Below, in pieces: positions 33,601 to 61,830 of a stretch of 64,000 bases of DNA. Position numbers and translations under genes: made by a program. The DNA comes from Podarcis erhardii (lineage: Eukaryota), in assembly GCA_964252035.1 (NCBI GenBank), contig OZ176206.1; one strand, given 5' to 3'. Position 1 is the stretch's first letter. Each line of letters begins with the position of its first letter. The notes beneath the pieces are model-generated. The model did no database searches, was not told where the DNA came from, and was given only the letters and a program-made list of their open reading frames with translations.

Positions 33601-33681
33601 GTCTGCTGGCCATGGGCAACCTGATAAAGGTATTGGGCAAAGATTTAGAAAACTGTCCTCATTTTTTCCTGGATTTTGAAA
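33601..33681 (+). CDS. CYRIA-like: CYRI-like coding exon 1 (11-nt UTR; ATG at 33612; [23 protein letters not shown])
   Basis: Long pyrimidine tract ending cag at 33600, gccATGg Kozak context, donor A|gtaagt at 33682. Confidence 0.95.
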
Positions 33682-34197
33682 GTAAGTCCCATGCGCAAAG
33701 AAGGGACGGGGGTGGTGTCTGTGATTACTGACAGAAGGAGTTGCTGTTCTCCACAAATTTTGGGGGTTACACTTTACTATATAAATATTTGAGGTGGTGC
33801 CAATATACTTTTTTTAAAAAATAAGAAGACTTTGTTGGGAAGCAGCAGGCAGTGACAACCAGACACTGTAACAGACTGGGCATAACTACACTACAGATTT
33901 GCAATTTAGCTGCCATGGCTGCTCCCAGAGAATCTTGGGAACTGGCCCCTCCCCCAAGCTGTCTTTGATGAACTGCAAAGTGAATGGGGTGGAAGCTGGC
34001 TTGAGGGAAGATGCATCAAACCACAGTCTTTCACAGGAAACTTCAGAATAGATATGGATTGTGGCTAATATCATGTGTACACAGCTTCAAACACCAGCAG
34101 TGGGAGTGCACTAGGGTCAGAGTAGACAATCATGTGTACACAGCCTAAGAAGAACTTTAACCTTGCAAAAGTGGGACTTAGGAAGTGAATATTAATA

Positions 34198-34240
<43 letters not shown>

Positions 34241-37200
34241 TGCATAGAAAGTTAAGTTCCACTTTTCCTGTTGAAAGCAATAGGATGAATATTAGTTGTG
34301 ACCAACATCCAACATGCCCTGCTGTTCCCAGTCAGGTGTGGTAACTAAAGTGTGAGCTGAGAACTGGGCAGTCCCTCCTTCAAATTGTGTTCACCACACT
34401 CAGACTACTATTTATTGGCCTTGGAATTTCCATCTGTAATATGTGGATATTAATTTATCTGGAAGAAACAGTTAAAGGATTACTGTGAAAGTGTATCTGA
34501 ATCACTCTTGAGTACTTAAAAGGACTATATTAAGTATTATTGTTTCCAAGAGGAGTTGGATAGAAATATCTTTCTCTGTCTGAGGGCCAATTTCCACAAC
34601 TTTTCAAACATTTGCCAAGTGTTTTACAGTTGACTGTCTTCACAATATTTCTTTCTTCAGAAGAAATCCATAGACTGACTAATAATAATAAAAATCTTTT
34701 AAGTGGCATACATAAAATAATATAAAATAATTATCAATAACACAGAAACAAAATCAACAGCATTTTAAAAACAATACACCTGCAAGGAATGCCAGGGTTT
34801 GAGAGATTTGTCCAAAACTACTCAAGGAACTTCATAGCAAGGAGAGATTTGGGCCTTGAACTCATGGGTCTAATCCCCAAACTCTAGGGTCAGTGACATC
34901 TTGGACTCATCAAAGAGGGAAAAGAAAAGGCAGCCTCTGATCTGGGCAGCAGCAAACCATTTCGTGCCAGCTGTTCTTATGCCCTTTCTGTGCTCCCAAC
35001 CTGGTGCCCTCCAGATTTTTTGCACTACAACTCCCATTGGCCCCAGCAGCATATCTGTATGATACTGGGGCTGATGAGAATTGGAGTCCAAATCATCTGG
35101 AGAACACCAGGTTGGGGAAAGCTGTTGCAGGGCTTTGTCTGTTGTTCCCTTTCCAAAGAGGTAAGGACTGATTCACAAAGGCCCTGCAGCATTTCTGGCC
35201 TGTTGCTATGGCCGCCAAGGCTATTGGGTCCTGCTAAGCAAACATGACTGACACCTGTGCCAATGTGTGGGCTGAACGAAGGCCTGATGGCTAAATAGAG
35301 CCCCTATGTGGGCAAATGCTTTGGCTGCCATCATAAATTAAACCTTTGGTGAGACTCTCCCAAACTTGCCAGCCATAGGTCCTGTTGAACAACCACGCTC
35401 CCCTTAGCCCCCAAATCTGGTTGGAGAACAGTGACTCTTGTCCTCCTCTGTTCCCTATCATTGGTCTTCCTCCCCATCAGTCAATGCACATCTCCATTCA
35501 GGGGCAGGAAGAGGTGGGGTGGGCCTCTCTATACTCAAACGTGGACCACCAACAGTTGTTTATTTTCTTCCCCTCTAGTCTAGCCTTCACTAGCCTGGTT
35601 CTCTTCAGGTGTTTTGGGCTACTACTCCATTGGGCTGATGGGAGTTGTAGTCCAGTACACCAGGAAAGAACCAGGCTGGCAGAGACTGGTCCAATTAATT
35701 GAGAACTGACTAAAACATATCTCTGAATGCTACAAAGTTTGTGGGCATGTTCACCTCATCACCAAGCACTCGCAGCCAAATAAGCCGTAACGTCTGGTTA
35801 GTGGTCCTATTTGAATGTAGAAATTGTTTGCTGAATGACTCTTCCTGCCACCCAGAAAGGGGCACCTTTCCCAGTGACATTCTCCCACAGACCTCTCCTT
35901 CCTTCCCCACCTCACTACCCATCATGCTTTTCTCCCTCTTGTCTCTTCTCTTGCAGGTAGCACATGGGGAACCTTCTTAAAGTGTTGACTTATAACGAGC
36001 TTGACCAAGGCCCTAATTTTTTCCTTGACTTTGAACGTGAGAAGGGATTTTTTTATTTTTTTGCCTTTGTTTTCATTCATGACTTTCTTTCATTGATTTA
36101 ATTCATGATTAAAATTGATTTATTTCGTTTTGTGTAGAGGTGTAGAGGCAAGGGCTTGTATCCTCAGGGCAGTTTCTTGTGGATTCAGTGCTGCTCAGGC
36201 ATACAAATGGTTTTTTTGCAGCATCCACACAATGTTGACCTCACCAAAATGCCATCCCATGTCCCTATCCAGATTTACCACTTCCACAAGTTATTTACTT
36301 ACCAGATTTCTCATGGAAGTGGTAAAAAAACAAAACAAAAATTCCATATAAAAAAGGAGAATAATATGGGACAGTATTTTTGTGAGGTGGGTGTCATGTG
36401 GATGCTGCAAAAACATTACTGAATGAGCAGCCCCGAGTCAGCAATAAACTGCCATGTGGAATTCCCCAAGAAGCTTCAGGGTGAGATCTAGAGAGGCAGA
36501 GGAGGGAGTCAGGAACCAGACAAGATAATGGCTGCTGGGCTGTGCACAGCAGAAATATGCTTCTGTTGCAGGTGCAATGCCTTCTCTCTGGCAAGATTAT
36601 CATTATATAGCAGTGAGAAAGGGCAGTAGCCAATCACACTGAGAGCAAAGGAGGTGGAGCAAGGGAAGAGATTGGTGGACCTTCTCAGAACCCTGGATAG
36701 TGGACAGTTGTTTTCTGAAGGGGAGGGTGATGGGCCAGAAAGTAAGGCTTCTCCTCCAGCAAAGCGCTCAGAAGCTCCCACATTTGGAGACGTCCTACAG
36801 GCAGCAGTCTGCATCTCCTCCAGAGTGACGGCCTGACTGCAGCCACATTTCCAGGATTTGTTAGAGTTGTGCTAGCTTCTCAGTGAAGAGGCATTTAGCA
36901 GCCCTGCGGTGTCCAGGCAGCACTGCCAAACAATTAACTTTCAGGGTTTGAATGGCACATTGCCACACCTCCTCACAAGCAGACACCAGCCTGGACCTCG
37001 ACTGCTGTAGGTGGGCTCTGTGTGCCTGACCCCCTCCCCCTTCTCAAGCTCCCATAGGGTGTGCATGAGAACTGCTGGGCCCTAGGACTGCTGAAGGTAT
37101 GTGGTCTGGGGAGAGAGGCATGGAAGACGAGTTAGCGCTAGATAAGGCAGACAGGCCAACAGCCCTGGAGCCCTGCTTTGGGGAGGAGAGTGGGGGGCAG

Positions 37201-40200
37201 CTCACTGCCTAGGATGCCACTGGTTTAGTGCCTCCTAGTGTTTTGTTTTTTATACTTTGTGGTTTCTTTTTGGTCCTCCTGTATATTTATTTTCTAATAT
37301 TTTCCCAGTACAGCTAAGGGCCAAAGGTCTGTGGCAGCCCTCCCCAGCTTGTTGCCCTTAAGATATTTCGGACTACAGTTCCCACCAGCCCCAGCCAGCA
37401 TGGTTGTATGAGTCAGGGTTTCTCCATATTTACGTTTGTCCTGTGGCAAGGAAGCACATGTCTGGGAGGTTTTCTGCTTCTCCCATGCTTTCTAGGCACA
37501 CGTCCAAGTGGTTTTCAGTTTGCTTGGCCGTTTTCTTTGGGGAAACCCACTCTTTAACCACTAAATCAGAGCAAACGTCAATCCGTGGAAAACCCAGTTG
37601 ACATTTGTGGATGAGCCCTCGCTGAGGCTCATGGGAGCTGTAGTCCAAAATGTTTGGAGGGCTACCGATGGTAAGGGTGGTCTGTGGGCTTCCGAGGGGC
37701 TCTGTTGCAGCTCACAGGCCGGGCCATGGCTTCCCAGTGTTCTTTGGGGGCAGCCCAAGACCTCATCCCCTCCCCAGGCGGTTGCACAACGTGACCTGTG
37801 TACACCCAACAAGCCTTGCCCATGATGCCAAGGGGTTTGGGGGGAGGCAGAACTCTCTGGTTGCAAATGGCTACTCCCCTGGTCCCCCTGACATTCCTTG
37901 GGTTGCCCCCCCAACCCCTGACCAGGCCAAGGGAGCTCTTGGACCCCCTCATTCCAAGCAAGCCATCCCAATGTCCCTCTCTCCCTTCCCCCTGGGGCTG
38001 GGCTGAAAAAGTGTCCTGCAGCACGAGTGTCCTGACCTCTCCCTTTCTCTCTGGGTGGGGTTCACTGCAGATGCACAGCCCACAGAAGCCGAGACAGCTG
38101 TGTGGAACCAGGTGAACGCTGTCCTAGAGGAGGCGCAGACCATTCTGGCGGAACTGCAGTCCTACACCGGAGCTGGGCAAGAGATCAGAGAGGTACTAGG
38201 AAGAGCCTGCTGGCCAACCAGATTAGTCAGTGGGAAACCAGCAAGCAAACAAGAGTGCTCTCCCCTCTTGCGGCATTCAGCAACTAGTGTTTAGAAGCAT
38301 TGCTGCCTTGGACTGTGGAGGGCAGAGCATAACCATCATGGTATAACCTGAGCCCTTCCCAAAGCTGACCCTCATATCCCAGAGCTAGGAGCAATGCTAG
38401 CAAGTGGTCTGGATTTCCCCCCCTCTCCCTACAATGATTTTTGTACTTTTGCAAAGCTAACATTTCAGGAAGAAAACTTAGCATCTTGTGTTACTTTATT
38501 GCAGGCCATCCAAAACCCCAGTGACTTGCAGCTCCAAGAAAAGGCATGGAATGCCGTGTGTCCCCTTGTGGCAAAGCTGAAGCGTTTTTATGAGTTTTCC
38601 CTTAGACTTGGTAAGTGCCCTCCCCTATATCAGCAACAAGTCTCATTTTCTCATTCTTCTCATCTTCAGTCCAGTTCGACCCACTTCCACATTAGTTTGA
38701 AAACCTCTTTTTTTTTTAACATAAGGAAACAGTGCCACATGAAAATGTCTTTCTTCCTAATATGCCAATCTGGATACATGGCTTTGTTTAGCATATACAT
38801 TTTTAAGAGGCAATTTGTCCCTAATACAATGCATTTCCTTATGGTGATTTCACGCAAATACTTGCTTCTGCATTCCCTTCTCATTACTATAAACGTTTTT
38901 GGTGTGAATTTTTGAAGGAGAAGCTGTGCTTTGGTTCCAGAAGCAAAGCTTTGGCAGGTTCACATTAAAATGTTAATTGCACTAATCCTGCAAGCTGTGC
39001 AGGGATTGGCCGGGTGAGGGGGCTGCTGCCTAACTTAACCATCTCCCTCCTTCTGTCTCTCCCAGAGAATGCCTTGCGGAGCTTGCTGGAAGCTCTCACC
39101 AGCCCACCTTACGCCCCGACTCAGCACCTGGAGAGGGAACAGGCTCTCGCCAAACAGTTTGCAGAAATCTTACACTTCACCCTCAGTTTTGACGAGCTCA
39201 AGGTATGTGTGGGAGGAGGCAGCCGCCAACAGTGGTTGGTCCAGCGGCAGCAGGGAATGTGATCTGAGCATAATAACAAGTAAAAAAACTCCCACAGGGG
39301 CTTCTGACTCTTGCTCCTGTGGAACAATATTAGGCACTTTGCACAGCACCCACTCTGGATGGTTGGCACAGGTGCAGATGTAGCCTACAAAACACACCCC
39401 CCCCCACCCCCCCCACACCCATCATCATCCCTTTCCCTCCCATATGTGGAGAAAAGCCTTCTGCTTCATCTTCTTCATCATCCCTGAATGAAGTCTCCCT
39501 TCTCTGTCTCCCAGATGACCAACCCTGCCATCCAGAATGATTTTAGCTACTATAGAAGAACCATCAGTCGAAACCGGATCAACAACCTGCAGGTAAGGAA
39601 CGGTGCCTTCCTTTCGCTGGGAGGCAGAGTAAAAACCCAGGCTGGGCAAAATGAATGGAAATTCTAATGGCAAAGGAATGGTGGGAACTCGAAGCTGCAA
39701 TGCAAGTGTAAATGTGCAGAGCAAACAGAGTATGTTCACCTGAGAGCCAGGGCTCATCCGCACTTCCTCTTGACCCATATTTTGATTGCCTTGGGTACTG
39801 ATTACTGTAATTCCCTCTGGCCCAAGAGCTTTTCTCGTTCTTCCATGGCTGTACCTTGCAAAAATCCAAATTTACCTACTGAACTGAAGCTCAATTAAGC
39901 AAAATCACTCTTTGGATTTTCTGCATATCCGATTCAGCAGGCAAGATCGGATTTTCGCAAGACACAGTGAGAAAAGCTTTCGGATCTGGGAGAATTAATC
40001 AGCACACAACACAATCAAATTAGGGGTCAAGCAAAAGTGTGGATGAGCTCTAACTGTCAAGAAAAAGAATAACGGAAAGCCAAGTGGGAGGGGGAATGGA
40101 ACGGAATGACTGGAAAAGGAGAGAGATATAGATATAAAAAGAGTAAAATGAACTATCTTGTCTGGATAGGTGGTTTCCTGTTTCACACTGAGAAGTTATT

Positions 40201-43200
40201 TTTAAATGTCCCCAGGGATGGAAATGAGAGCTGTCCATAGAAATAAACATAGAAATTCAACATTTTAAGGTAGCTGGGGTTGGGCAACATGGTGCCCACC
40301 CTCTACCACCCACCCACCCACCCACCCACCCACACAAAAGTAACAACAGTAACAACCTAGTAAGGACTGAGCATGCCCAGTGGGCATGGAATGTTGGCTG
40401 GTTTTGGTGGGGAGGCGATGAAAAACTGATGGAGTAGAGTGGCTGGGACCTTAAACAGAAGCCCTCCATGCCGCAACATTTTGCTGCAACTGATCTCCAT
40501 TCCTGCCCTGCAGTTAGACGCTGAGAGTGAGGTGAACAATGAAATGGCCAACCGGATGTCCCTCTTCTACGCAGAGGCCACCCCGATGCTGAAGACTCTC
40601 AGCAATGCCACGACCAAATTTGTTTCAGAGGTGAGTGATGCCTCCCAAGGCGCAGAGAAGTCAGAGGCAAGAGTTGCCAAGACCACCTTAACATGACAGC
40701 CTGCTGCAAAGTCCAGGCTTGCTTGGTTGTTCATGCAAGGTTAACACTGCACACTGGCCTGGTGGGCTGATGGGCAGAATCCACCCCAAGGAATCTGTGC
40801 TGTGGTGGCACAGGGACTGGGGCTGCCTCTCTCCCTTCAGATATTCAGCTTGCTCTCTCCCTGGGGAGGAAGAGAAGGGGGTAATCAGCATGCAAACTGG
40901 GTCTCCTTTCAGAACAAAACTCTTCCCATTGAGGACACGACTGACTGTTTGAGCACCATGGCCTGTGTCTGCCGGGTGATGCTGGAAACGCCGTGAGTAC
41001 AATGCCCTACATGATTATAGGCTCCAAAGACTGAGCATAAGTGGGTTGCACACGTACAGCAGTCTAAAAAGCCACACAATTGACAATTAAAACCCGACTA
41101 AACTGAGACCCCATGTTAAAAATATGGGGTTACCGTACTCAGAAACTACAATTAATCCAGAAAGTGGCTGCTAGACTGATGACTGGGAGTGGCCACTGGG
41201 ACCACATTTATTATTATCATTATTATCAAATGAATGTGCAAAAATGTAAACAAAGAGTCACCAAGGGCCACCGTACAATGGGATTGGTCAGCCTTCCAAA
41301 TGCCGCAAAGCAACTTACCTGGTGAGCCTCTCTAGGGATGGAATTCCACATCAGAGGGGCAACCACTGCAAAGGCCCTGTTCCTGGTCACCAGCATTTTG
41401 ACCTCTGGACCAGGCATCTGTAGCAAGCCCCCACCCACTAGATGACTTTAAGGGACCCATACCGGAAATCACATATTTTTAGAGTCTTTAGGCTATGTTA
41501 AGCAGTACCATGGTATGAGCTCCCCAGGAAAGCTGGGAAGGAAATGTGGGGCATGACAGCTGGTCCAAGGAGGCTTGTTCATGAAGCTCTTTCTTGTTTG
41601 CAACAGGGAATATCGGAGCCGCTTCACCAACACCGAAACTCTCCTTTTCTGCATGCGGGTGATGGTGGGGGTCATCATTCTTTATGACCATGTCCATCCT
41701 GTGGGGGCTTTTGCCAAGACCTCCAAAATTGACGTGAGTGACATTTCTCTCTTCATATAGAAACATCAATTAGAGAAACTCAGGGAGCTGACAAGCCAGC
41801 CTTTGATGACCTTGACCTTCTTGATGTTTTGGACTACAACTCAGCAGCCTCAGAATAATATAGCCTTAATGGCTGGTGCTGATGGGTGTTGTAGTGGAAA
41901 ACACCTGGAGGGCACCAGGTAGGGGAAGGCTGGAGCCTCCAGTGTTTTTAGTGACAATTGATCCTCAATTAGCTTTTAAAGGGAAGGAGGAGCAAAGATC
42001 CATAGGAGCAACCAAGCATCAGAAGAACCACGCTGGGTGGGACTTTCCATTCCAGTTTAAATGCGGGGTTTTCCCCCTCTCTTGCTGCACCTCCCATATC
42101 CACATGTTCTGGAAGACCCTATTTTGCCTTTCTCAAATCTCGTGAATCTGCTCACAGACAAAGGGACTGTTGTCAGTATAAGTGGGTGCACTTTTCCAAC
42201 ATTTCCCCCTTTGAAATTTGACTAACAAGGGTGTTTTTTTGTTTGTTTGTTTTTAATGCCGGTAGATGAAAGGATGTATCAAGGTCTTGAAAGACCAGCC
42301 TTCCAACAGCACAGAAGGCCTTCTGAATGCACTGAGGTAAGGCAGCCCAAGAGGCACATTTGAGGAAATGGGCTTTGGCAGCCAGAAAAGGTCTGCTGCA
42401 ACTCTCAAAAAAGAACTGCAAGCGCATGCACACATGCACACACACACGTATCTTGCACAAGCACCAGGACTGCACTGGGATGACTTTGGCAGCCTAGGCA
42501 TGTGCTGGAGTTGAAGATAGGTAGCATGGAAGGATTTTCAGAAACTGAAATTGGTTTTGTAGACATGAGCAGTTCTTATTGAAGGAGTGCTGTGGCAGGA
42601 ACTGGAGAAGTTGACTGTTACTAAATGACCATTGACCTGGCTTCACAGAAGGAACTCCCTCGTGCATTGTCCTCACATCACAATTATCCTGTGGGGCAGA
42701 CCATTATTCCCATTTTACAGCTGGGGAGTTGAGGCCAGCAGCCCTTCCAGTGTGCATCGCACAGGAGGGGCTGGCCTGAGTCCTGGATTCCAAACCAGCT
42801 CATGCCCACCAGCCGGTGCTTTGGTATCAAGGGAGCTGCAGTTTCTCAGCACTCAGACCACTGTATGCTGTTCAGGGACACTGCATCTTCCCCATTCCCA
42901 ACAACTGGCACTTTAATTGCTTTGGCCAGCATCACAGAAACCTACCTTTTAGTCCAGGCGTGGGCAGCCTTTGGCCATCCAGATGTTGCTGGACTACAGC
43001 TACCATCAACCCTGACTATTGGCTATGTTGGCTGGGCCTGATGGGAGTTGATGTCCAACAGCACCTGGGGGTTAAGCTATTGGCTACACCTGGGCATTCA
43101 GGTTCCTACCCTCTACTCACCGGCAAACTCCCCCTATATCCACGCTTCCTTTCTGCCAAACTAGTCCCTACTAAGAAATCCCACATTTTTACCTTTGATC

Positions 43201-43371
43201 AGGGGCTTAGACATGCATTGCACCTGTTCCCACAGCGGCCAGCACAATTGGCTCCTTTTCTCTACAACTGGTGTGCCCTTTCCCACTGCCTCCCTGCTTC
43301 TTCCTAGGTACACCACCCGGCACCTCAATGATGACACCACATCCAAGCAGATCCGGGCCTTGCTGCAATGA
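33612..43371 (+). CDS. CYRIA-like: CYFIP-related Rac1 interactor A-like (FAM49/DUF1394 family), complete CDS, join(33612..33681,38071..38192,38505..38610,39066..39202,39515..39592,40514..40630,40913..40992,41607..41733,42266..42336,43308..43371), 323 aa
   Basis: Ten GT-AG exons of 70,122,106,137,78,117,80,127,71,64 nt sum to 972 nt with consistent phases. They translate [31 protein letters not shown]...[17 protein letters not shown]...[16 protein letters not shown]. Sequence, length and exon sizes match the CYRI/FAM49 family as I recall it. Confidence 0.96.
34199..34240. repeat. (ATT)14 microsatellite
   Basis: Direct reading. Confidence 0.95.
36213..36413. mobile_element. Small MITE with TTTTTGCAGCATCCACA inverted termini
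   Basis: tttttgcagcatccacac..gacctcaccaaaat pairs with atttttgtgaggt..tgtggatgctgcaaaaa. Confidence 0.6.
38071..38192 (+). CDS. CYRIA-like: CYRI-like coding exon 2 ([15 protein letters not shown]...GAGQEIRE)
   Basis: ctgcag acceptor, GAG|gtact donor, 122 nt. Confidence 0.95.
38505..38610 (+). CDS. CYRIA-like: CYRI-like coding exon 3 ([35 protein letters not shown])
   Basis: ttgcag acceptor, G|gtaagt donor, 106 nt. Confidence 0.95.
39066..39202 (+). CDS. CYRIA-like: CYRI-like coding exon 4 ([16 protein letters not shown]...FDELK)
   Basis: tcccag acceptor, AAG|gtatgt donor, 137 nt. Confidence 0.95.
39515..39592 (+). CDS. CYRIA-like: CYRI-like coding exon 5 ([26 protein letters not shown]; Rac1-binding motif)
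   Basis: tcccag acceptor, CAG|gtaagg donor, 78 nt. Confidence 0.95.
39749..40050. mobile_element. MITE with GGGCTCATCCACACTT-type TIRs (PIF/Harbinger-like); relatives near 19060-19258, 21584-21830, 27030-27290, 37410-37620
   Basis: GGGCTCATCCGCACTT ... AAGTGTGGATGAGCTC inverted termini. Confidence 0.65.
40514..40630 (+). CDS. CYRIA-like: CYRI-like coding exon 6 ([39 protein letters not shown])
   Basis: ctgcag acceptor, GAG|gtgagt donor, 117 nt. Confidence 0.95.
40913..40992 (+). CDS. CYRIA-like: CYRI-like coding exon 7 ([27 protein letters not shown])
   Basis: tttcag acceptor, CC|gtgagt donor, 80 nt. Confidence 0.95.
41607..41733 (+). CDS. CYRIA-like: CYRI-like coding exon 8 ([42 protein letters not shown])
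   Basis: caacag acceptor, GAC|gtgagt donor, 127 nt. Confidence 0.95.
42266..42336 (+). CDS. CYRIA-like: CYRI-like coding exon 9 ([24 protein letters not shown])
   Basis: cggtag acceptor, AG|gtaagg donor, 71 nt. Confidence 0.95.
43308..43371 (+). CDS. CYRIA-like: CYRI-like last coding exon ([20 protein letters not shown])
   Basis: tcctag acceptor, TGA at 43369-43371. Confidence 0.95.
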
Positions 43372-43493: not shown

Positions 43494-43667
43494 NNNNNNN
43501 NNNNNNNNNNNNNNNNNNNNNNNNNNNNNNNNNNNNNNNNNNNNNNNNNNNNNNNNNNNNNNNNNNNNNNNNNNNNNNNNNNNNNNNNNNNNNNNNNNNN
43601 NNNNNNNNNNNNNNNNNNNNNNNNNNNNNNNNNNNNNNNNNNNNNNNNNNNNNNNNNNNNNNNNNNN
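43494..43667. other. Assembly gap (174 N) in the CYRI-like 3' UTR
   Basis: Run of N. Confidence 0.99.
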
Positions 43668-50200: not shown

Positions 50201-50388
50201 GGTGGGCTTGCGCTGCCTTTTAATCCCACTGTAATTAATGACCTTATCTTTGGCCCAAGCCATTTAGCTAAAGTGGCTGGAGGAAAGAAAGGGGGGGCAC
50301 AGGGTGGCCAGATGGGAGGCTGGCATTTGTCTGCGGATTAGCTGTAGGCAGATGGAGCTAAGTGGCCTTCCTAGTCCCCACCCCCTTG

Positions 50389-50391
<3 letters not shown>

Positions 50392-50462
<71 letters not shown>

Positions 50463-50465
50463 ACA
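50392..50465. repeat. Compound (CT)n(CA)n microsatellite
   Basis: Direct reading. Confidence 0.95.
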
Positions 50466-51184
50466 GGCACTCCAAGTGATAACAGCCCCAAACCTGAGAA
50501 TGTACAACTGGTGATTGTGCCCATGGGAGTAAATGCAAGAGGGCTTTTTGATCCTTGCCGTTTCTTCTGTAAGGGGCAGGGAAGGATATGACCTTTGTGA
50601 GCTCAGTAGGCAGACCTACTGATTCTCCATGCAGCGTCTATCCCTAGTGGCATCTCCAGAAAGGGCTGGGAGAAATTCCCTGCCTGTCAGTCACAGCAGA
50701 AAATGTGAGACTAGATGGGCCACAGGTGAAAGGAAGCTTCCTCTACTCCAAGACTTTTGGGTGCCTAAGGCAGGGAGTTCAAATGCTCCCATTAACTCAC
50801 AACGGGGACATTTGCACAGTTCATGGCACTTCTCTCGTCAGGGCACCCTGAATCTGCCCCCTCTCTGGGCCAGGCCTGGCCTGGGCATAGAGTCAGCTCT
50901 GGTCTTTGGTCTGGGCACAAACAGGCTTCCCATTTCACACAGCTTTGTCCTGCTGCGGACAGCTGCTTGCCTAAACTACCCTCACCAGGCCACTGTGCCA
51001 GCCTTGACACAGCACTGCTCTGCAAAGCAACGGGCTCCCTGCATCCCCACAGACCTATAACTCCCTCCCTCCCTCCCAGTCTCCAGGGGGAAGCCTCCTT
51101 GAAACAAAGCCTGCTCCCAAGAGGGCAGTTCTCCTTTCTCAACCCCATTAACCATTTCTCCAGCAGCCACAGGAAGGCCTAAAC

Positions 51185-53512: not shown

Positions 53513-53526
53513 TTTATCTTTTTATA
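53513..53526 (-). terminator. Candidate TRIT1 polyadenylation signal (TATAAA/GATAAA variants)
   Basis: Adjacent variant hexamers about 200 nt after the stop, followed by U-rich downstream sequence on the minus strand. Confidence 0.3.
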
Positions 53527-53725
53527 TAAATAAAAAAATAGTCAGGAAGTAGAGCAGCACGCTGGCATTCATGCCTGGATCAACTCGATTATTTGCATAA
53601 AATGGAACCGTCCATCTCTGGAGAAAGGCGACTCGGCATTTTTTAGATGAGAGATCCTTGGTGAGGGTAGGATCCTGCCTCCCGGGCCAGCGTTCCCACC
53701 AACAACCTCCTCCCAAAGATGGAAT

Positions 53726-53892
53726 CTACATTTCACAGGCTTCCACGCTCCCGTCCTTCTCCTCCTCTCTCTCGTTCCCACCAGTCGTGGCACTTCCTTC
53801 ATGGCGCTTTGTGGAAAGGGGATCTGAGGTCAGGTGTCGCTGGTGTTGCTGCTGCTTCTGGTGGAAACGGTGGCCTTTGGATTTTATGTGCT
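53726..53892 (-). CDS. TRIT1: TRIT1 last coding exon ([20 protein letters not shown]...VEACEM*)
   Basis: tggcag acceptor; HIKSKGH completes the zinc finger; TAG at 53728-53726. Confidence 0.92.
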
Positions 53893-56800
53893 CTGCCAAC
53901 ACAGGTTAACAGGAGGTCATTTTGGAAACAAAACCATGAACAGTGCTGCTTTTATATAATATTGCAAAAATCAGAATACAATACTGTTTATTATAAACAC
54001 ACACTCGTTCCGCACACTGAATGTGTTTTGTACCTTTTGGGGTGGAAACTACAGATAAATCGGTGTGGTCTGAGAGTCTCTTATCCAAATCCTCCAAGCA
54101 AAGTGCTAACCAGAAGTTCCATCCTGTATTTCAATTCTATTCTGAATCTATGATTGTGTGGATATACTGGGCACTGTCCAGTAAAGGTCAATCATGATTT
54201 TGGCCAGGTCTACACACCTGCCACAGGTAGGTCTGAGATAACAGAGGAATCCTGAGCTAACAGTCCCACTGCAAGAAGAGTACTTTTTAAATGCTCTCCA
54301 ACTTAAAACATACACACACAAAAACACAAAACTCCTTGCAAGAAGAAAACTGGCACAGAACAAAGAGGCCTGGGGTCCTAGTCTGTCTTTACTTGCAGGA
54401 AAGTTTTTTGTTTTTGTTTTAATATGGGGCAGCGTTCAAGAATGGCATTCTCCACATGAAGAGTTAGGTGATTCTTGAGAAAGTCACTTCAGACTGCAGA
54501 GGCTGCCTTTTTAAAAAAAAAATGTTCCAAGTAATATTCCTTCATGGAATAAGCATCTAGTAAATACAAGGGGCCATTAAGGACAGCATTGCATACTCAA
54601 TCTGGCAATCTGAGACGGTAAATACCAGGATTCCACCACTTCCACCTACTGCCTCAGGCAGGCATAGGCAAGCCCAACCCTCCAGATGTTTTGAGACTAC
54701 AATTCCCATCATCCCTGACCACTGGTCCTGTTAGCTAGGGATGATGGGAGTTGTAGTCCCAAAACATCTGGAGGGCTGAGTTTGCCTATGCCTGGCCTCA
54801 GAGGTTTATCAGCTCTAGGCTGGCCTATGAACACGCATGGAAATAAGGTAGTAAACTCCTGGGCTGGTAGAGGGAATTGTAAAACAGCAGGTGGGGAGGA
54901 CATTTCCAGATGATTTTCACTTTTGGAAAGGATCCCTGCAAATAAAGGTAGAAATGTTCTAACACAGCCAGTTCTCATCTCATGAGCCAGTTTTCTTCTT
55001 GTAGGGAGGCATGTATGTATATACGTATATTTAAATCTTTCCAAAAAGAGGGTTCTTTAAGAGAACCATGATTTGAAGTGATGGATGCCATCATATCACT
55101 ACCAAGCCAGCTGGAGGCATGTGCAAACTACAACAGACTCTCATTTAAAAATAAATCTTTCAGACGTTACCTTCAAAACAAGCCTTTGGCTTCTTTGTTT
55201 CTGCTGCACTAAAAAAAAAAACTTTCAACTCTTCCCACTGCATTCTTAAAGGACTGAATTACAGACAGCCTTCCAGATGTTTTAGACTACGACTCCCATC
55301 AGCCCCAGTGTCACACAGCCCCGCTGGCTGAGGCTGATGGGAGTCGTAGTCCAAAACGCCTGGAGAAGGCCAAGCTCAGACAAGAAAATCCAAGCGCATC
55401 CCTTTCACCTTCAATGGCCAGCTTCCTGCTGTTCTAAGCAGGTGGAAGTAGCTTCTCCCTGAAGAAATGCTAATTTCTCTCCCGCACTCCACATTTAACA
55501 CAGAAGTAGATCACTCCTGCCTTGCATGCGATTGCTGGGTTCACGATCCCTTTACCCAAGGAGGCAACTGCTTTTACAGCTACAGTAGTGGAAAGTTCGG
55601 GGGGCGAGGGGGAGATGGGAGAGGAGGATAAAATGACAGATGGCGGCTCCTGGAAGGGTTTATGATTCTCCCCACCCCCTTGTAAAGTGGCTCCTTTTAT
55701 AAGAATGCTGTAAACAGCCCTCCAGGAGCTGATCACTCCGGCAGGCAGGAAGAGGTTGAGGAAATTTGGGGGGCGGGGAGCAGGGCTTTGTTCCCGGGAA
55801 CTGGGAGAGCTTTGTTCCTTTTGCTCCCTCCCCATTCCCACCCCACCCCCCCGGCCACGATTTCCCCCTCCCCCCACCCAAAACCTCCTGCAAGCGCAAT
55901 CCTTCACCTTTCCACTCTCTGTCCCCAATGATGACTCTGCTGCACAGCTCACACATGTGCCGCCTCCGCTTGCCCTCCTGGGCCTCTCCTGCCTCGTCCG
56001 CCATCGTGATGGGCTCGGCCGGTGGCTGCCGCCCCTTGCGAGGAAATGACATTTTGGATCAGTGGTTGCCAGCTGTCCCCTCGGACTCATCCCCAGCTGC
56101 CCCCTACCATGCCCTTTAAAAAGCATTGCTCAGAATAGTGGTTTGTACGACCCACTAAGGAAGGAAACCACACAGTAAAATACAAAACAGGAACCATTTA
56201 ATGGTGCATTTGTTCAAAACCGAATCAAAAGCATTTAGTTTAATTAATTTAACAGAATTAATGGACTTGGTCCCATGATACTAGCTTTCAAAGCCTAATA
56301 GTCATTTACACCCCTTGCCTTTAAGCACCCCATCTAGGGAATCCCACAACCCCCCAGGAGGTGGTGCCATCTACTTTGGGAACCACTGGCTTAGAAGAAA
56401 GGTCCAGCAAAAGAAGAGGGTGACAGAGGGGCTGCCCCTCCATTCCTTAAAAGGCAAGCGGGCCCCTGGCCTCAGAATTTAAGCAAGCCAGGCCTCTTCC
56501 CACCCTGTGAAGCTTCCCCACAATTCAGTTCCAGATATGGGGAGAGATGGTCAGTGGAACTCATTACATGTGAACTAAACTGGACTCTGCAGGGCTCAAG
56601 AGGAACCCCTGAAGGAACTCAAGATGCCACAGGTTTCTTTTGTCAACCTGGTGCCTTCCAGATGTTTCAGACTACAACTTCCAGCACTGTCTGGGGCTGA
56701 TGAAAGCTGCAGTGGAAAACATCCCGAAGGCACCAGGTTGGTGAAGGCTACATTGCACACATGCCCTGTGGAGTCCCTGTGTGTAATCCAGGGCCAAGAG

Positions 56801-59800
56801 GTGATGCCTGCCCCTGGTAATCCTATCTTTTGCCTGTAGCCTGTTTACTTTCCCCATAGAACAGAATGGAGCCAGAAGCTGGCTGCTATCTGCACTGCCT
56901 CCCTGCAGCCCCAGCCTGAATGGTATTTCTTGGTCACATTAAGGTGTGACAACCCCTGGACAACTGCTTTCAATTTATTTGCAAATTTATGTACCCTCAT
57001 ATAAAATGGGCAAATGCATGTTTCAAGTCACATAATAAACTGCCTTATGCAGAGTCAGACCATTGGTCAACCAGCTCAAAATCGTCTAGACTGGCAGTCA
57101 CTCTTCAGGATTTCTGACAGGGGTCTCTAGAAGTGCCACTAGGAATTGAACCCAGCACCCGGGACCTTGTGCGAGACATGCTGTTGAACTGAATGGAAAC
57201 AGTAGCCAGAGCGCTACCAAAGTCAGCATAAAGTAGAAGTGGACGATTGCCACAGTCACAAAAGAGGAAACTTCTTGAAAATGAGAGAACTGGTAAAAAG
57301 GAAGTTGAAACGGAAGGCCAAAAGGGTCAAATCTCTGCAGAACACTTGGGGGTGATTAAAAAAAATACAATCAGGGCTCATCTAGGATGCATCTGTGAGC
57401 TGCCGGTTCTCAGCCTGGAAAAGTCCATACTGTATAGGTGAAGGAGGAAGCCAGACAGAATGTCAGCAGCTAGTTATTTTCTTTCTTTGCTTAGCAGAAA
57501 TAAGGTTTTCAGCAGCAGCAAGGGGACATTTGGAGGGGAGAGCACTTGGGTCTGCCCTCATCAGCACATGCAGCCCCTCCATGGACAGAATGAAAAACAC
57601 CTCAGCAAAGGCTCCTGAGAAAACTTAGCAGTTTGCATGAGGTAAGAGGACAGGCCCTTTACTGGATCTGTCCATAGTTAAAAACACAGGTAGCACAGAA
57701 TAAGAATAAATGGGCAGTTCTCAAAGGGGTAGGAGAGATGAGGCCTGGGCTCTTTCATTTCTTCATTAATGATCTATAGAGTCAGGGGTGAGGTGTGAGG
57801 TGGCCAACTCTGTGGATGACACCAAATGATTCAGAAGGCAAAAAAACAGATTGCAAAGAATTCCCAAAGGCTCTCTCCAAACTGGGCAAATGGGCACTGA
57901 AATGGCAGCTGCAGTTCACTGTAACTCAGAATTGTAGATTTGCAAGGCACCCAATAGGTCATCTAACCCAACCCCCTGCCGTGTAAACCGATCCATAATC
58001 ATGAGATGAGGCACTTCTGGCTGCCTTGAGGTTTCTGTGGGTTCCTGCAGGTCCTCCTCAACTGCCTGGGGGTTCTCCACAGAACTCCAAGCCCCACTCA
58101 TAAGAGACGGCTTCCCCAGAGTTTGGGTCAGGCAAGGTCCTGCAAAAAGGCATTTCTCTTGTCCTCTGGCCTTAGAGTGCAACTGCCAGTCAGAGCAAAC
58201 AAGACTAGGCTACAGAAACCAGGGAGCTGACTCAGCATAAAGGTGGCTTCCACTTTCCTAGCACTGAGTCTCTGTTGATTTGAAAAAGGGTCCTCCACAT
58301 TTTTAAATGCTGTTTCTAGCTCCCTTGCCTACCACGTACCTGGACAAAGCTCTCCACAATCTGCACGGCAGGTTCCAGCACTTTCTCCTCCCACTGAGAG
58401 AGATCCGAGACTTCCAAGCCATAAACAGGGGGCACGTTTGGGCCGGGCCCTAGAGAGACCACGGTAAGAAATGGGGGGGGGGGAGGGAAGGCAGCAGTGA
58501 GGGTCAGCAGCCTGCTCACCCCATTTGCCAGTCTGGCAGAGGACCATTTGCTCCCACCCCGCCTGGCATAAAAGCAGAAGGCTAAGCAACAGAGAGGACA
58601 ACTTCACATTATTCCTTTAAGGGACATTCATAAGCTCAAGGAAAGGAGAGTGGTCAAGCATCTTTTGGAAGGGGGGAAACCACCACATGGGTACCAAGGG
58701 CCCCACCCACCACCGAAGTCTGGCCCTTGGAATGTTGCCCAGAAAAGAAAAGGATCCCCCAGCACCCCAATTTAAAGAAAGGTGCAAACCATTGCGCTTT
58801 CTTCCATGAGATCTAGAAACTTGTTCTTTTCAAAACAACTTCTGCTGTAGGCATTCCAAATCCTGCATCAAATTCGTACCATGGGGCCTGCAGCCTCAAA
58901 TCCCACCTGAGAAATCCAGGGGTGTGGCAGCCCACCCCACTCCCCACTTCCTACCTCCACCTCCTGCAGGATGCCTCCAGCCAAAAACAACTCCTGGTTT
59001 CCCCCCTCCAGCTCCTGCCCTTCTGAGGTCCAACTGCCAGCTGGCTGGGCAAGCTCAGTGGCACCAGATGAGACAAAAGGCTTCCCAAGTGCCAAACCCT
59101 AAGCAGGTGATGCCTCTTAATGCCCTGACCACAAAAACCACCAGCCCAGGGAGCACCTGTCGGCTTTTTGGCTGGAGAGGGAGCGCGGGCTGCGCTGCAC
59201 CTGTGCCGGGAAAAGACTGGGCCATCAACCCAAAGCCTCTTCTTGTTCCTCCTCCCTTCTTGGGTTTCTTGAGGGCTCCTCCCCACCCCTGCCCCCGTCA
59301 CCCTGCCTCGCAAACCTGCCAAGGACTTTTCAACAAGTGCTCGGCTCCCAGCTGTCAATCTTGGCTCTCCTCCAAGCCTGGAGCAAAGGGAGGGAAGTCC
59401 GGTTGGCTCCCAGCCAGAGGAGGCTGTGCAGGAAGGAGCCAATCGGATTGGGAAGGGCAGCTGTCTCTCCCCCCGCCCCCCCCCCGTCTTTCACTCCAGG
59501 ATGATTCAATGGGGAGGGGCACAGTGTGTGGGTGTGGGGGGGTGTCTGCGTAGGGTCCCAACACATTTCTCTCTCTCTGCCTGGCCAGTGACTGACAGGG
59601 AACAAGTTGCTTCACAGTTCATACTCTGCTTACAATTCACAGGCCTAGGTATGGCCTCAGGCCCAGCCTGCATAGGGAGAGACAGGGAAGAGGATCAGAT
59701 CAAAGGCGGGGCTTGAATCAGAAAGGAAAGCCACACCCTCTTGAGTAGGTTGTGGGTGACGGCTATGTCACTTTGAGGAGAAGGCACTCTGCACATGCTC

Positions 59801-61830
59801 AAAGGAACAGAAGATTTTCACAAAACTGAGCACTGGCTGTTTTTGAGGCAAGGGCAGAGGAATCCGGGTGAGCATTGGCCCCAATGAAGAGCCAAGGGAA
59901 GAGGGAGAAATGCAAAGACTTCAAGGAGGCAGAAATAGGAAATAGAGGGAGAGGAGGACAGCCGGCAGAGAGCAAAACGGCGGGAGAGAATGGAGGCAGG
60001 AAAGAAGGACTTACGTCTCAGGAACCGGTTCCGGACCCACTTGTTCTGCTTTCGGGCGTACCTTTTGGTCACTATCTTCAGGGCCTGGATTCCTAAAATC
60101 ATAAACAGAGGAGAGGTCACAGAGGACAAGGACCCTGGGCAGGGAGCAAGCCTGGGAAAGGGGACGTGCTCACATATTGCAAGAACTGATGCCCCAAGGG
60201 GACAAAGGACAGATCCTTCTCAGCAAGACAGGGGAGGAGAAAACACCAAAAGAACCACCCTCTCGCAAAGAGTCTGAAACTGCAAAGCAGCATTTACACT
60301 GCAAATTCAAACCAGCCACTTCCCTCAAAGAATCTTGCCCATGCCACACAGGTGCTGGGAATTCTTTTCTAGAGGTCCAATTATTCTTCTCTGATTTTTT
60401 TCTCAGTGTTAGCTACACTGACCTAGATGGGCCAAGGGTCTGACCTGGTATAAAACAGTTCCCTACAGATGCAAAGTAGGGTTTTCAAAAGCAGCAGAAC
60501 GTTTGTTCCATCTGCAATACATAAATCCAAAATGTATGGCCGTGAAACCCAAAACTCGCTGGCCAAATGTTGAAAAACATTGCCCATCCCTTCCCTGCAG
60601 CAAAAGCGGCCCCTTTCCTGCCAGCCCGGTCCCCACCTTGGTTCAGGAGCTGCTGGCTCATCTCCTCTGAGCACTTGCCCTCTGCAATCAGGAACTGGTG
60701 GAATTCCTTGAAGCCGATGGACTGGAAAATGCCGTGCTGATAATCCTGGCTGAGGCAGAAGAAGGGGGGGGGGGAAGCAGGCAGGTCAGCCTGTTCTCCA
60801 TCTGCAAAACACCACAAGCCCCTCTGCGCACTGGGGGCTGAGATCCAGGCTGGCCAGTCCGTCAGGCGACAGGTACACCTGTTCCAGCCATTATGAGCCA
60901 TGCACAGGGTGCATTTCAGATCAAGTCGCAGCACTTCAGAAGTAGAAAACCGCTGCATGGGTGCTTGGTGCTCTCTGCCACTCCCCCCCCCCCCCCCCAG
61001 CATCCTGCAACCACACTGAGTCCCAGTCTTTGACCTCTATCCCCATCCTGGGTGGATGAATGCCAGGACAGGAAGTGGCAAGGTGGGCTGTGGGGGGAGA
61101 TGGGAAGAAACTAACCTGTTCTCATCTACCCTCTCCTGGTTATATCGCTGGTGGAAGTTCCGCAGCTCTCCCAGCAGCCCAGCCTCCAGCATCGCATCTA
61201 CCCGCTGGTCCAGCCGTTCTTCTAGAACTGATGAGCACCCAGAAGGTTAAGGATGCAGCCACGCAAAGGGACGCCCCACCCCATGGAACAGGTTGGGAAA
61301 TATCGCTCTGGATGCCACGGGCAAAATCAGGTCACACATGGCACCAAGCCACATCATCCACCTGATCTCAGAGGGTGAGAGGGAAGCAGCATCGCTAGTT
61401 CCTCCATTCGTTCTCTGGAATAATCTGGTTGGTTTGGAATTTACTGGGGGCTGGGGAAGTGGCCCACCTCTCCAACCCCTGAAATGGACCAGGTAATTTT
61501 CTAAAAATGCATACTATGCAAAAGCCAGGAATATTCACATTTTTCATGCAGATTAAGTGGGCCTTGTAAAAGGATCTGAAAAGCAACATTTTCACCACTG
61601 CCCAGGGGGTGGAGGACAGGTGTAGGCAAAGCAGGAAGAAATACTCAGTCGAAGGGCTGTGGCCTTTAGTCCCTCCCTCTTTTTTACCTGCCTGCTCTGC
61701 ATGTAGCCAGAGGATGCAAGGGTTGGGGTACTTCAGGGGGCCGCTCAGCGGCCCTCCCCCTTCTTCCTGCTGCTGCTGCTGCAGTAGCTCGCTGTGGGGG
61801 ATGCCCGTTTTTTCAAACACTTGCAAACTC
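53726..61830 (-). CDS. TRIT1: tRNA dimethylallyltransferase (tRNA isopentenyltransferase 1), partial: exons 5-11, complement(join(53726..53892,55908..56034,58340..58449,60015..60092,60637..60749,61116..61227,61688..61830))
   Basis: Seven phase-consistent GT-AG exons (143,112,113,78,110,127,167 nt) translate [14 protein letters not shown]...[17 protein letters not shown]...[17 protein letters not shown]...[10 protein letters not shown]...[25 protein letters not shown]. This matches the TRIT1/Mod5 core and C-terminal matrin-type zinc finger. Exons 1-4 were not found in the window. Confidence 0.95.
54659..54794. mobile_element. Palindromic ~135-bp hAT-type MITE (best copy of a family with about 20 copies in the window)
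   Basis: TIR CAGGCATAGGCAA/TTGCCTATGCCTG; 8-bp TSD GCCTCAGG/GCCTCAGA; internal CCTCCAGATGTTTTG..ACTACAA..CCCATCA palindrome. Relatives near 1930, 2867, 4060, 17551, 20890, 24617, 32575, 34990, 35580, 37333, 41800, 42955, 44960, 46415, 48860, 49330, 53147, 55270, 56630, 62080. Confidence 0.85.
55908..56034 (-). CDS. TRIT1: TRIT1 exon 10 ([42 protein letters not shown])
   Basis: AAG acceptor (ttcctcgcaag), G|gtgaag donor, 127 nt; zinc-finger CxxC half. Confidence 0.9.
58340..58449 (-). CDS. TRIT1: TRIT1 exon 9 ([36 protein letters not shown])
   Basis: ctctag acceptor, CAG|gtacgt donor, 110 nt. Confidence 0.94.
60015..60092 (-). CDS. TRIT1: TRIT1 exon 8 ([26 protein letters not shown])
   Basis: ttttag acceptor, C|gtaagt donor, 78 nt. 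Confidence 0.94.
60637..60749 (-). CDS. TRIT1: TRIT1 exon 7 ([38 protein letters not shown])
   Basis: cctcag acceptor, AAG|gtgggg donor, 113 nt. Confidence 0.94.
61116..61227 (-). CDS. TRIT1: TRIT1 exon 6 ([38 protein letters not shown])
   Basis: catcag acceptor, AG|gttagt donor, 112 nt. Confidence 0.94.
61688..61830 (-). CDS. TRIT1: TRIT1 exon 5 ([47 protein letters not shown])
   Basis: ctgcag acceptor, G|gtaaaa donor, 143 nt. Confidence 0.94.

What the first reader, a model, noticed from the sequence alone, without database searches (positions are those of the whole stretch)
33612..61830. Probable third CYRI/FAM49 ohnolog next to TRIT1 (MYCL paralogon), not known from human
Seen: an intact 323-aa CYRI-family gene converging on TRIT1. 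Established: human CYRIA lies near MYCN (2p24), CYRIB near MYC (8q24), and TRIT1 is next to MYCL (1p34), where I know of no human CYRI gene. By hand against recalled human CYRI-A the protein is only about 80% identical, low for a family whose orthologs are usually very conserved. It has the CYRI-A-type 70-nt first exon and [10 protein letters not shown], but CYRI-B-type MTNPA, KQFAE, ATTKF, LKDQP and ALRYTT. Inference: this is a separate 2R whole-genome-duplication paralog (a CYRI-C), kept in squamates and lost in at least placental mammals. It would be a largely uncharacterised Rac1/WAVE-pathway inhibitor.
Basis: partly seen in the sequence, partly recalled or inferred. Interest (0 to 1): 0.8.

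Follow-up and report, generated by a model that had tools for sequence, protein, structure and literature searches.

The report
Third CYRI gene beside TRIT1
This lizard window holds an intact, expressed third member of the CYRI (FAM49) family of Rac1 inhibitors; it dates back to early jawed vertebrates and was not found in placental mammals, but databases already list it as "CYRIA-like/fam49al" and no paper found here describes it.

Summary
A 10-exon CYRI gene lies on the + strand (33612-43371). All splice sites are GT-AG and it encodes 323 aa. It runs tail-to-tail with TRIT1. The assembly gap (43494-43667) starts 122 nt after the stop codon and touches no coding exon.

- In an ML tree the protein falls in a third gnathostome clade (support 98.6/100). 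That clade holds sharks, a chimaera, paddlefish, teleosts, frogs, turtles, birds, squamates and two marsupials. It is sister to CYRIA.
- Forcing the protein into the CYRIA clade is rejected (AU p = 2e-11).
- Wall lizards have separate CYRIA and CYRIB proteins.
- Chicken shows NT5C1A-HPCAL4-this gene-TRIT1, which matches human 1p34.2.

The gene is under strong purifying selection (dN/dS 0.002-0.04). It keeps Gly2 and all 13 Rac1-contact residues. Spliced RNA contigs confirm five of its splice junctions and indicate a sixth.

It is not new to databases. RefSeq, Ensembl and ZFIN list it as "CYRIA-like" or "fam49al". No paper found here describes it, and the CYRI literature speaks of two isoforms.

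Retention is much wider than squamates. No placental copy appeared in my searches.

Extra finding: the gene has two alternative first coding exons, one A-type and one B-type. Both are used, and both are unusually conserved at the nucleotide level.

The scan has already reported similar retained ohnologs in this genome for other genes.

The parts
33612..33681 (+). CYRI-C first coding exon 1a (A-type, 70 nt; encodes [23 protein letters not shown])
   Evidence: ATG and GT donor. RNA contig joint 33681>38071 in 3 runs. 70/70 nt identical to chicken.
35964..36036 (+). Alternative first coding exon 1b (B-type, 73 nt; encodes [24 protein letters not shown]). When spliced from exon 1a, the exon starts at 35957.
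   Evidence: Joints 36036>38071 (3 runs) and 33681>35957 (2 runs). The 1b form is 99.4% identical to Anolis model P0094.
38071..38192 (+). exon 2
   Evidence: AG/GT sites. Joints to exons 1a and 1b and to exon 3.
38505..38610 (+). exon 3
   Evidence: Joints 38192>38505 and 38610>39066 in all 4 runs.
39066..39202 (+). exon 4
   Evidence: Joint. A loose end at 39202 in run X5 reads the start of exon 5.
39515..39592 (+). exon 5 (holds the YYRR Rac1-binding arginines)
40514..40630 (+). exon 6
40913..40992 (+). exon 7
41607..41733 (+). exon 8
42266..42336 (+). exon 9
43308..43371 (+). exon 10, coding part, with TGA stop at 43369-43371
43494..43667 (.). Assembly gap (N), 122 nt downstream of the CYRI-C stop codon and outside all coding exons
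53726..53895 (-). TRIT1 last coding exon (second half of the C-terminal zinc finger, with stop). Boundaries are approximate.
   Evidence: ORF. tblastn match to the 3' end of the Sceloporus TRIT1 gene.
55870..56037 (-). TRIT1 exon with the first half of the zinc finger ([14 protein letters not shown]). Boundaries are approximate.
58325..58414 (-). TRIT1 exon (approximate)
   Evidence: Match to the chicken IPPT gene
59917..60108 (-). TRIT1 exon, end of the IPPT domain (approximate)
   Evidence: Pfam IPPT positions 222-242
60632..60748 (-). TRIT1 exon (approximate)
   Evidence: 72% identical to the chicken IPPT gene ORF
61103..61222 (-). TRIT1 exon (approximate)
   Evidence: Pfam IPPT E = 4e-5, positions 167-195
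61680..61841 (-). TRIT1 exon (approximate). The gene continues beyond the right end of the window.
   Evidence: Pfam IPPT positions 125-159; 80% identical to chicken

Best explanation
The feature is the lizard ortholog of the gene annotated as 'CYFIP-related Rac1 interactor A-like' or 'fam49al'. I call it CYRI-C here for convenience. It is a third member of the vertebrate CYRI/FAM49 family and the sister of CYRIA. It arose before jawed vertebrates radiated, most likely in the 2R genome duplication, because it sits in the HPCAL4-TRIT1(-MYCL) block that is paralogous to the VSNL1-CYRIA-MYCN and MYC-CYRIB blocks.

It is a working gene: intact, spliced, transcribed and under strong purifying selection.

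By inference from CYRI-B and CYRI-A, the protein is N-myristoylated on Gly2, sits on membranes and binds active Rac1 through the conserved Arg-Arg surface. It would thereby compete with the Scar/WAVE complex and locally damp Arp2/3-driven protrusion. It is made with either of two alternative N-terminal helices (exon 1a or exon 1b).

Shown: gene structure, orthology, phylogeny, local synteny, selection, transcription and splicing. Inferred: myristoylation, Rac1 binding, the cellular role, the 2R origin and the loss in placentals.
For: - Gene model: intact 323/324-aa model with canonical splice sites.
- Family: Pfam PF07159 over the full length, E = 1.7e-144. CYRI-B crystal chains 6yjj and 7ajk match at E about 1e-174.
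- Orthologs: the protein is 100% identical to residues 86-408 of Sceloporus 'CYRIA-like' P0069. On the 299-aa core it is 92-98% identical to 'A-like' proteins of frogs, teleosts, birds, turtles and Monodelphis, but only 81-82% identical to Podarcis CYRIA and CYRIB.
- Tree: clade C 98.6/100, clade A 97.7/99, clade B 100/100, A+C 86.6/95, lampreys outside.
- AU test rejects placement inside clade A, p = 2e-11.
- Podarcis has separate CYRIA (P0302) and CYRIB (P0278).
- Synteny: chicken NT5C1A-HPCAL4-gene-TRIT1; Sceloporus gene-TRIT1.
- Selection: dN/dS is 0.002 against Sceloporus (dS 0.60), 0.005 against Python and 0.04 against chicken.
- Function: Gly2 and all 13 Rac1-interface residues listed for CYRI-B in PMC7955166 are conserved.
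- Expression: GT..AG joints at exons 1a-2, 1b-2, 1a-1b, 2-3 and 3-4 in contigs of 4 runs from 3 studies.
Against: - MYCL is not in the window. Its adjacency to TRIT1 rests on the human map, recalled and not tested here.
- Flanks in opossum, Python, Astyanax and turbot were too short or unannotated to show neighbours. Conserved synteny is therefore shown only in sauropsids.
- The A+C node has moderate support (86.6/95).
- A gene tree cannot distinguish 2R from an older segmental duplication.
- Absence in placentals rests on the lack of hits in capped hit lists and on knowledge of the human gene set, not on a genome search.
- No biochemical data exist for this paralog.
- The runs are only guessed to be RNA; their spliced contigs are what indicates RNA.
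Confidence: 0.88

Rival explanations
1. The gene arose by an ancient small-scale (segmental or tandem, then translocated) duplication of a CYRIA-like ancestor before the gnathostome radiation. On this view it is not a product of the 2R whole-genome duplication.
For: The tree shows only that the A/C split predates the split of cartilaginous and bony vertebrates. It says nothing about the mechanism. Synteny was shown only for chicken and Sceloporus.
Against: The neighbours belong to families with matching paralogs next to the other CYRI genes, according to the human map. These are HPCAL4 versus VSNL1 near CYRIA, and MYCL versus MYCN and MYC. FAM49A is co-amplified with MYCN (PMC10911929). The topology ((A,C),B) with lampreys outside is what two rounds of duplication followed by one loss would predict.
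Confidence: 0.1
2. The gene is simply the CYRIA ortholog, moved next to TRIT1 in reptiles and evolving unusually.
For: Some annotations call orthologs 'CYRIA' (Anolis carolinensis P0094, Gallus P0070, Cuculus P0087). It shares the [10 protein letters not shown] motif with CYRIA.
Against: The AU test rejects this placement (p = 2e-11). Podarcis, snakes, geckos, crocodiles and birds each have a separate true CYRIA. The core is only 81.3% identical to Podarcis CYRIA but 94.6% identical to a teleost A-like protein.
Confidence: 0.01
3. The gene is a silent or decaying copy, such as a pseudogene or an annotation artefact.
For: None was found. The only candidate issue is the assembly gap nearby.
Against: The frame is open with 10 canonical introns. 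There are 0 amino-acid differences from Sceloporus despite 90 nucleotide differences. Spliced contigs are present in four runs. The gap lies outside the CDS.
Confidence: 0.01

Closest known systems
CYRI-A (CYRIA / FAM49A)
   Same: It has the same PF07159 single-domain architecture and about the same length. Both have a 70-nt A-type first coding exon and the [10 protein letters not shown] loop. All Rac1-contact residues are the same. CYRI-A is the sister clade in the tree.
   Different: The core is only 81% identical to the CYRIA of the same genus. The gene lies at a different locus, next to TRIT1 and HPCAL4 rather than near MYCN. Among bony vertebrates it is more constrained than CYRIA: lizard to teleost is 94.6% for this gene against 85.3% for CYRIA. 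No placental mammal copy was found.
CYRI-B (CYRIB / FAM49B), with crystal structures 6yjj, 7ajk and 7ajl
   Same: About 82% identical. It shares the MTNPA, ATTKF, LKDQP and ALRYTT motifs and the B-type alternative first exon. Gly2 and the Arg160/Arg161 surface are conserved.
   Different: CYRI-B forms a separate clade with 100/100 support. 29 core positions in this protein differ from both Podarcis CYRIA and CYRIB. At dimer-contact positions 166, 320 and 321 it follows CYRIA (N, R, A) rather than CYRIB (M, K, S).
Database entries 'CYFIP-related Rac1 interactor A-like' (RefSeq) and 'fam49al' (Ensembl/ZFIN naming)
   Same: These are orthologs of this gene. Examples are Sceloporus P0069 (100% identical), Elgaria P0230, Python P0227, Monodelphis P0235, Bufo P0051 and teleost P0077.
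   Different: There is no biological difference; this is the same gene. The names hide that it is an ancient separate paralog. Some records misname it CYRIA or CYRIB, and some models carry spurious N-terminal extensions or read both first exons in tandem.

Membership tests
CYRI / FAM49 family (PF07159, CYRIA/CYRIB Rac1-binding domain) | Full-length match to the DUF1394/CYRIA-B_Rac1-bd domain in a single-domain protein of about 323 aa | tested here: met
   PF07159 E = 1.7e-144, profile positions 2-301 of 301. CYRI-B PDB chains match at E about 1e-174.
CYRI / FAM49 family (PF07159, CYRIA/CYRIB Rac1-binding domain) | N-terminal Met-Gly (Gly2 myristoylation site) | tested here: met
   Both first exons start with MGNL. 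Actual myristoylation cannot be tested here.
CYRI / FAM49 family (PF07159, CYRIA/CYRIB Rac1-binding domain) | Rac1-contact residues in CYRI-B numbering: R64, Q68, M147, P150, Q153, N154, S157, R160, R161, N185, S188, L189, A192 | tested here: met
   All 13 are identical to human and Podarcis CYRIB. The residue list comes from PMC7955166.
CYRI / FAM49 family (PF07159, CYRIA/CYRIB Rac1-binding domain) | Binds GTP-loaded Rac1 and antagonises Scar/WAVE | not testable with these tools
   This needs a pulldown or a cell assay.
Separate third gnathostome paralog ('CYRI-C' = CYRIA-like/fam49al) | Forms its own supported clade, distinct from the CYRIA and CYRIB clades, and contains both cartilaginous and bony vertebrates | tested here: met
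   Clade support is 98.6/100. Placement inside the A clade is rejected, p-AU 2e-11.
Separate third gnathostome paralog ('CYRI-C' = CYRIA-like/fam49al) | The same lineage also has distinct CYRIA and CYRIB genes | tested here: met
   Podarcis CYRIA P0302 and CYRIB P0278. That the window is from a wall lizard rests on earlier scan notes.
Separate third gnathostome paralog ('CYRI-C' = CYRIA-like/fam49al) | Conserved neighbourhood: tail-to-tail with TRIT1, with HPCAL4 upstream | tested here: met
   Met in chicken, Sceloporus and the window. Fish, snake and opossum flanks were uninformative.
2R ohnolog of the MYC paralogon | The three CYRI loci lie on paralogous chromosome segments next to MYCL, MYCN and MYC | tested here: inconclusive
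   MYCL is not in the window. HPCAL4, NT5C1A and TRIT1 in chicken match human 1p34.2. FAM49A is co-amplified with MYCN. The rest is recalled from the human map.
2R ohnolog of the MYC paralogon | Duplication dated between the agnathan/gnathostome split and the gnathostome crown | tested here: inconclusive
   The tree has lampreys outside the three gnathostome clades, but the basal node has 76.8/90 support. Lamprey duplications complicate dating.

The most novel reading that the evidence does not exclude
All three vertebrate CYRI genes carry an ancient pair of alternative first coding exons, an A-type and a B-type N-terminal helix. Synonymous sites in these exons are nearly frozen: exon 1a is 70/70 nt identical between lizard and chicken. 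The most novel reading is that this pair is a regulated switch of membrane anchoring or autoinhibition that the CYRI literature has not described. On the same reading, CYRI-C is a non-redundant Rac1 brake, more constrained than CYRI-A, whose presence in zebrafish, Xenopus and chick confounds CYRI loss-of-function studies there.
Probability: 0.3. Interest if true: 0.55.

Novelty: new member of a known kind. Interest (0 to 1): 0.4.

Why it matters
CYRI proteins are a recently recognised brake on Rac1-Scar/WAVE actin assembly. They act in cell migration, macropinocytosis, T-cell activation and resistance to invasive bacteria. The papers read here treat the family as two proteins, CYRI-A and CYRI-B (PMC7543656, PMC7955166).

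A third member is kept nearly unchanged from ray-finned fishes to marsupials; the core is 92-98% identical. Knock-outs of cyria and cyrib in zebrafish, frog or chick may therefore be buffered by an unstudied gene. Placental mammals would be the reduced case.

It also adds one more retained ohnolog to the MYC/MYCN/MYCL paralogon.

The practical novelty is modest, because gene models already exist in public databases. What is added here:
- explicit orthology and phylogeny;
- retention in marsupials;
- evidence of expression;
- the conserved pair of alternative first exons.

Tried and rejected
- A spliced protein has no single reference. To get protein ids I searched with a stop-free 187-aa frame around exon 3, limited to residues 49-88. 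I then used P0069:86-408, which is identical to the window protein, as its stand-in.
- Whole-ORF Pfam scans of TRIT1 pieces gave nothing. Tight exon coordinates gave colinear IPPT hits. The last TRIT1 exon had no Pfam support and was confirmed only by similarity to the Sceloporus gene.
- One search failed because I gave a reference that contained stop codons.
- The look-up of encoding contigs gave no record for wombat or Bufo. It gave no DNA for opossum and no neighbours within 10 kb for Astyanax, turbot and Python. Synteny outside sauropsids is therefore untested.
- The window is not Sceloporus. Exon DNA is only about 88-96% identical, although the proteins are identical.
- Nothing upstream (1-33000) looked like HPCAL4 or another gene. 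That stretch holds only repeat-derived ORFs. Rfam found nothing.
- Searches of the scan's own notes for CYRI, FAM49 and MYCN found nothing.
- Paper searches for fam49al, FAM49A-like, CYRIA-like, CYRI-C and FAM49C found no relevant paper.
- The long 'isoform X1' N-terminal extensions and the 349-aa models were considered as real isoforms and rejected. The extensions are unrelated between species, and the 349-aa models read both first exons in tandem.
Full report
**What is in the sequence**

A CYRI/FAM49 gene lies on the + strand from 33612 to 43371. I rebuilt it exon by exon. It has ten coding exons:
- exon 1a, 33612-33681
- exon 2, 38071-38192
- exon 3, 38505-38610
- exon 4, 39066-39202
- exon 5, 39515-39592
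- exon 6, 40514-40630
- exon 7, 40913-40992
- exon 8, 41607-41733
- exon 9, 42266-42336
- exon 10, 43308-43371

Every exon has an AG acceptor and a GT donor. The CDS is 972 nt and encodes 323 aa, ending in TGA at 43369-43371.

The assembly gap that the scan's program flagged (43494-43667) starts 122 nt after the stop codon. It interrupts no exon and cannot affect the frame. I did not try to fill it, and I could not test continuity across it.

A second possible first coding exon, 1b (35964-36036, 73 nt), lies 2.3 kb downstream of exon 1a. It has its own ATG and GT donor in the same phase, and it gives a 324-aa protein.

**The neighbour**

On the - strand, ORF pieces at 61680-61841, 61103-61222 and 59917-60108 hit Pfam IPPT at colinear profile positions. 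They match the chicken gene that carries PF01715 next to the orthologous CYRI gene. A zinc-finger exon lies at 55870-56037. The last coding exon, at about 53726-53895, matches the 3' end of the Sceloporus TRIT1 gene.

TRIT1 therefore converges on the CYRI gene. The two stop codons are about 10.35 kb apart, and TRIT1 runs off the right end of the window. MYCL is not in the window. Positions 1-33000 hold only repeat-derived ORFs, and Rfam found nothing.

**Which gene it is**

The 1a protein is 100% identical to residues 86-408 of RefSeq 'CYFIP-related Rac1 interactor A-like isoform X1' of Sceloporus undulatus (P0069). The 1b form is 99.4% identical to an Anolis carolinensis model (P0094). The DNA is not Sceloporus, because the exons are only about 88-96% identical. 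Earlier notes of this scan call the genome a wall lizard.

Identity on the 299-aa core (everything after the first exon) is as follows:

| Compared with | Identity |
|---|---|
| Monodelphis 'A-like' | 97.7% |
| Chicken 'A-like' | 96.3% |
| Teleost (Scleropages) 'A-like' | 94.6% |
| Bufo 'A-like' | 92.3% |
| Podarcis CYRIA | 81.3% |
| Podarcis CYRIB | 81.9% |
| Rodent CYRIA | 81.9% |
| Human CYRIB | 82.3% |

Identities to the 65 full-core hits of the first two searches fall into two groups with nothing between: 91.6-100% and 80-86%.

**Phylogeny**

I ran IQ-TREE on 56 core sequences. The best model was Q.plant+I+R3, with two invertebrate outgroups. Support values are SH-aLRT / UFBoot.

- CYRIB clade, 100/100: chimaera, frogs, a caecilian, a newt, Podarcis, birds and mammals.
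- CYRIA clade, 97.7/99: chimaera, skates, bichir, sturgeon, teleosts, lungfish, coelacanth, frogs, monotreme, marsupial, rodent, birds, crocodile, gecko, snake and Podarcis.
- Third clade, 98.6/100: sawshark, chimaera, paddlefish, teleosts, frogs, turtles, birds, Elgaria, Python, Anolis, Monodelphis, wombat and the window protein.

The A clade and the third clade are sisters (86.6/95), and lampreys fall outside all three. A tree constrained to put the window protein inside CYRIA is worse by 54.6 lnL units and is rejected (p-AU 2e-11).

Squamates have a separate true CYRIA. Examples are Pantherophis P0239, Lacerta, Eublepharis, Varanus and Podarcis muralis/raffonei P0302. They also have a CYRIB, Podarcis muralis P0278.

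**Synteny**

In chicken the gene order is a 5'-nucleotidase gene (NT5C1A-type), a 191-aa EF-hand gene (HPCAL4-type), the CYRI gene, then the IPPT gene TRIT1. This is the order of human 1p34.2 as I recall it, minus the CYRI gene. Sceloporus shows the same tail-to-tail pair with TRIT1.

HPCAL4 is a paralog of VSNL1, which lies beside CYRIA in human (recalled). FAM49A is a recurrent passenger on the MYCN amplicon (PMC10911929).

Neighbours could not be seen in opossum, Python, Astyanax or turbot. The 2R origin therefore remains a well-supported inference, not a result.

**Is it functional?**

- Against Sceloporus there are 90 nucleotide differences and no amino-acid difference (dN/dS 0.002 at dS 0.60). 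Against Python dN/dS is 0.005, and against chicken 0.04.
- Pfam PF07159 covers the whole protein (E = 1.7e-144). CYRI-B crystal chains match at E about 1e-174.
- Gly2 and all 13 residues listed as the Rac1 interface of CYRI-B are identical. These include Arg160 and Arg161, whose mutation abolishes binding (PMC7955166).
- Contigs of four public runs from three studies carry GT..AG joints exactly at my exon borders: 33681>38071, 36036>38071, 33681>35957, 38192>38505 and 38610>39066. One contig end also reads into exon 5. The runs are only guessed to be RNA, but spliced contigs can hardly come from DNA.

The gene is transcribed and spliced as modelled.

**Mechanism**

I infer the mechanism from CYRI-A and CYRI-B. 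The protein would be a myristoylated, membrane-associated protein that captures active Rac1 through the conserved Arg-Arg surface. It would thereby compete with CYFIP in the Scar/WAVE complex and limit Arp2/3-driven protrusion.

At three dimer-contact positions (166, 320 and 321) it follows CYRIA rather than CYRIB. 29 core positions differ from both paralogs of the same genus, so some specialisation is likely. None of this was tested biochemically.

**Comparison with what is known**

The gene is already in databases. RefSeq calls it 'CYFIP-related Rac1 interactor A-like'. Ensembl and UniProt use 'family with sequence similarity 49 member A, like'. Some records call it CYRIA, CYRIB or FAM49B-like.

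I found no paper that mentions it under any of these names. The structural papers state that two CYRI isoforms exist (PMC7543656; PMC7955166).

No placental sequence appeared among the high-identity hits of two large searches. Monotremes are unresolved, because only an echidna CYRIA was seen.

Among bony vertebrates the third paralog is more constrained than CYRIA and less than CYRIB. Lizard to mammal identity is 99.0% for B, 97.7% for C and 90.3% for A. The two cartilaginous-fish copies sit on long branches.

**The two first exons**

Both exon 1a and exon 1b are used. Exon 1a encodes a peptide that is invariant from teleosts to lizard. Its DNA is 70/70 identical between the lizard and chicken, and exon 1b is 70/73 identical. 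The remaining exons are only 80-89% identical to chicken. Conservation extends about 35-45 nt into the flanking introns. This is typical of regulated alternative exons.

A transcript that joins 1a to 1b also exists. In it the 1a start codon reaches a stop after 33 codons (my translation).

The same A-type plus B-type exon pair is visible in gene models of CYRIA (P0139, P0058) and CYRIB (P0157). The whale-shark CYRI-B crystal protein carries the A-type N-terminus. The exon pair therefore appears older than the gene duplications. I did not follow this up further.

**Verdict**

The feature is a real, expressed, ancient third CYRI gene. It is catalogued under misleading names and has not been characterised. 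Interest is moderate.

Noticed in passing
window 33612-33681 and 35964-36036 (with flanks 33578-33715 and 35919-36072): The gene has two alternative first coding exons, an A-type and a B-type N-terminal helix. Both are spliced to exon 2 in RNA contigs, and a 1a-to-1b joint also exists. Their nucleotides are far more conserved than the rest of the CDS: 70/70 and 70/73 against chicken, compared with 80-89%. The same exon pair shows up in CYRIA and CYRIB gene models, so it probably predates the gene duplications.
   Followed up: partly
P0069, P0094, P0067, P0070, P0071, P0072 (orthologs); P0139, P0105, P0038 (349-aa-type models): Many public 'isoform X1' models carry 60-240-aa N-terminal extensions that are unrelated between species. 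These are translated 5'UTR and would remove the Gly2 myristoylation site. Other models read both first exons in tandem. Both look like annotation artefacts.
   Followed up: partly
window 6960-7691 (+) and 10076-10855 (+): The 243-aa ORF has a GIY-YIG-like motif, which suggests a Penelope-like element. The 259-aa ORF looks like the tail of a LINE ORF2.
   Followed up: no
L001 7200-8090 and 10001-15326 (chicken): In chicken an HPCAL4-type EF-hand gene ends only about 2 kb from the start of the CYRI-C gene. This mirrors the VSNL1-CYRIA neighbourhood recalled from human 2p24. In the lizard window no such gene lies within 33 kb upstream.
   Followed up: no
P0155 (Callorhinchus) and P0164 (Pristiophorus) in the tree: The cartilaginous-fish members of the third clade sit on long branches (0.17-0.21 substitutions per site). 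The bony-vertebrate members are almost invariant. Constraint on this paralog therefore differs sharply between the two lineages.
   Followed up: no
window 50264-50524: There are (GA)n and (CA)n microsatellite runs in the intergenic stretch between the two genes. They explain a spurious six-frame match to the chicken intergenic region.
   Followed up: no
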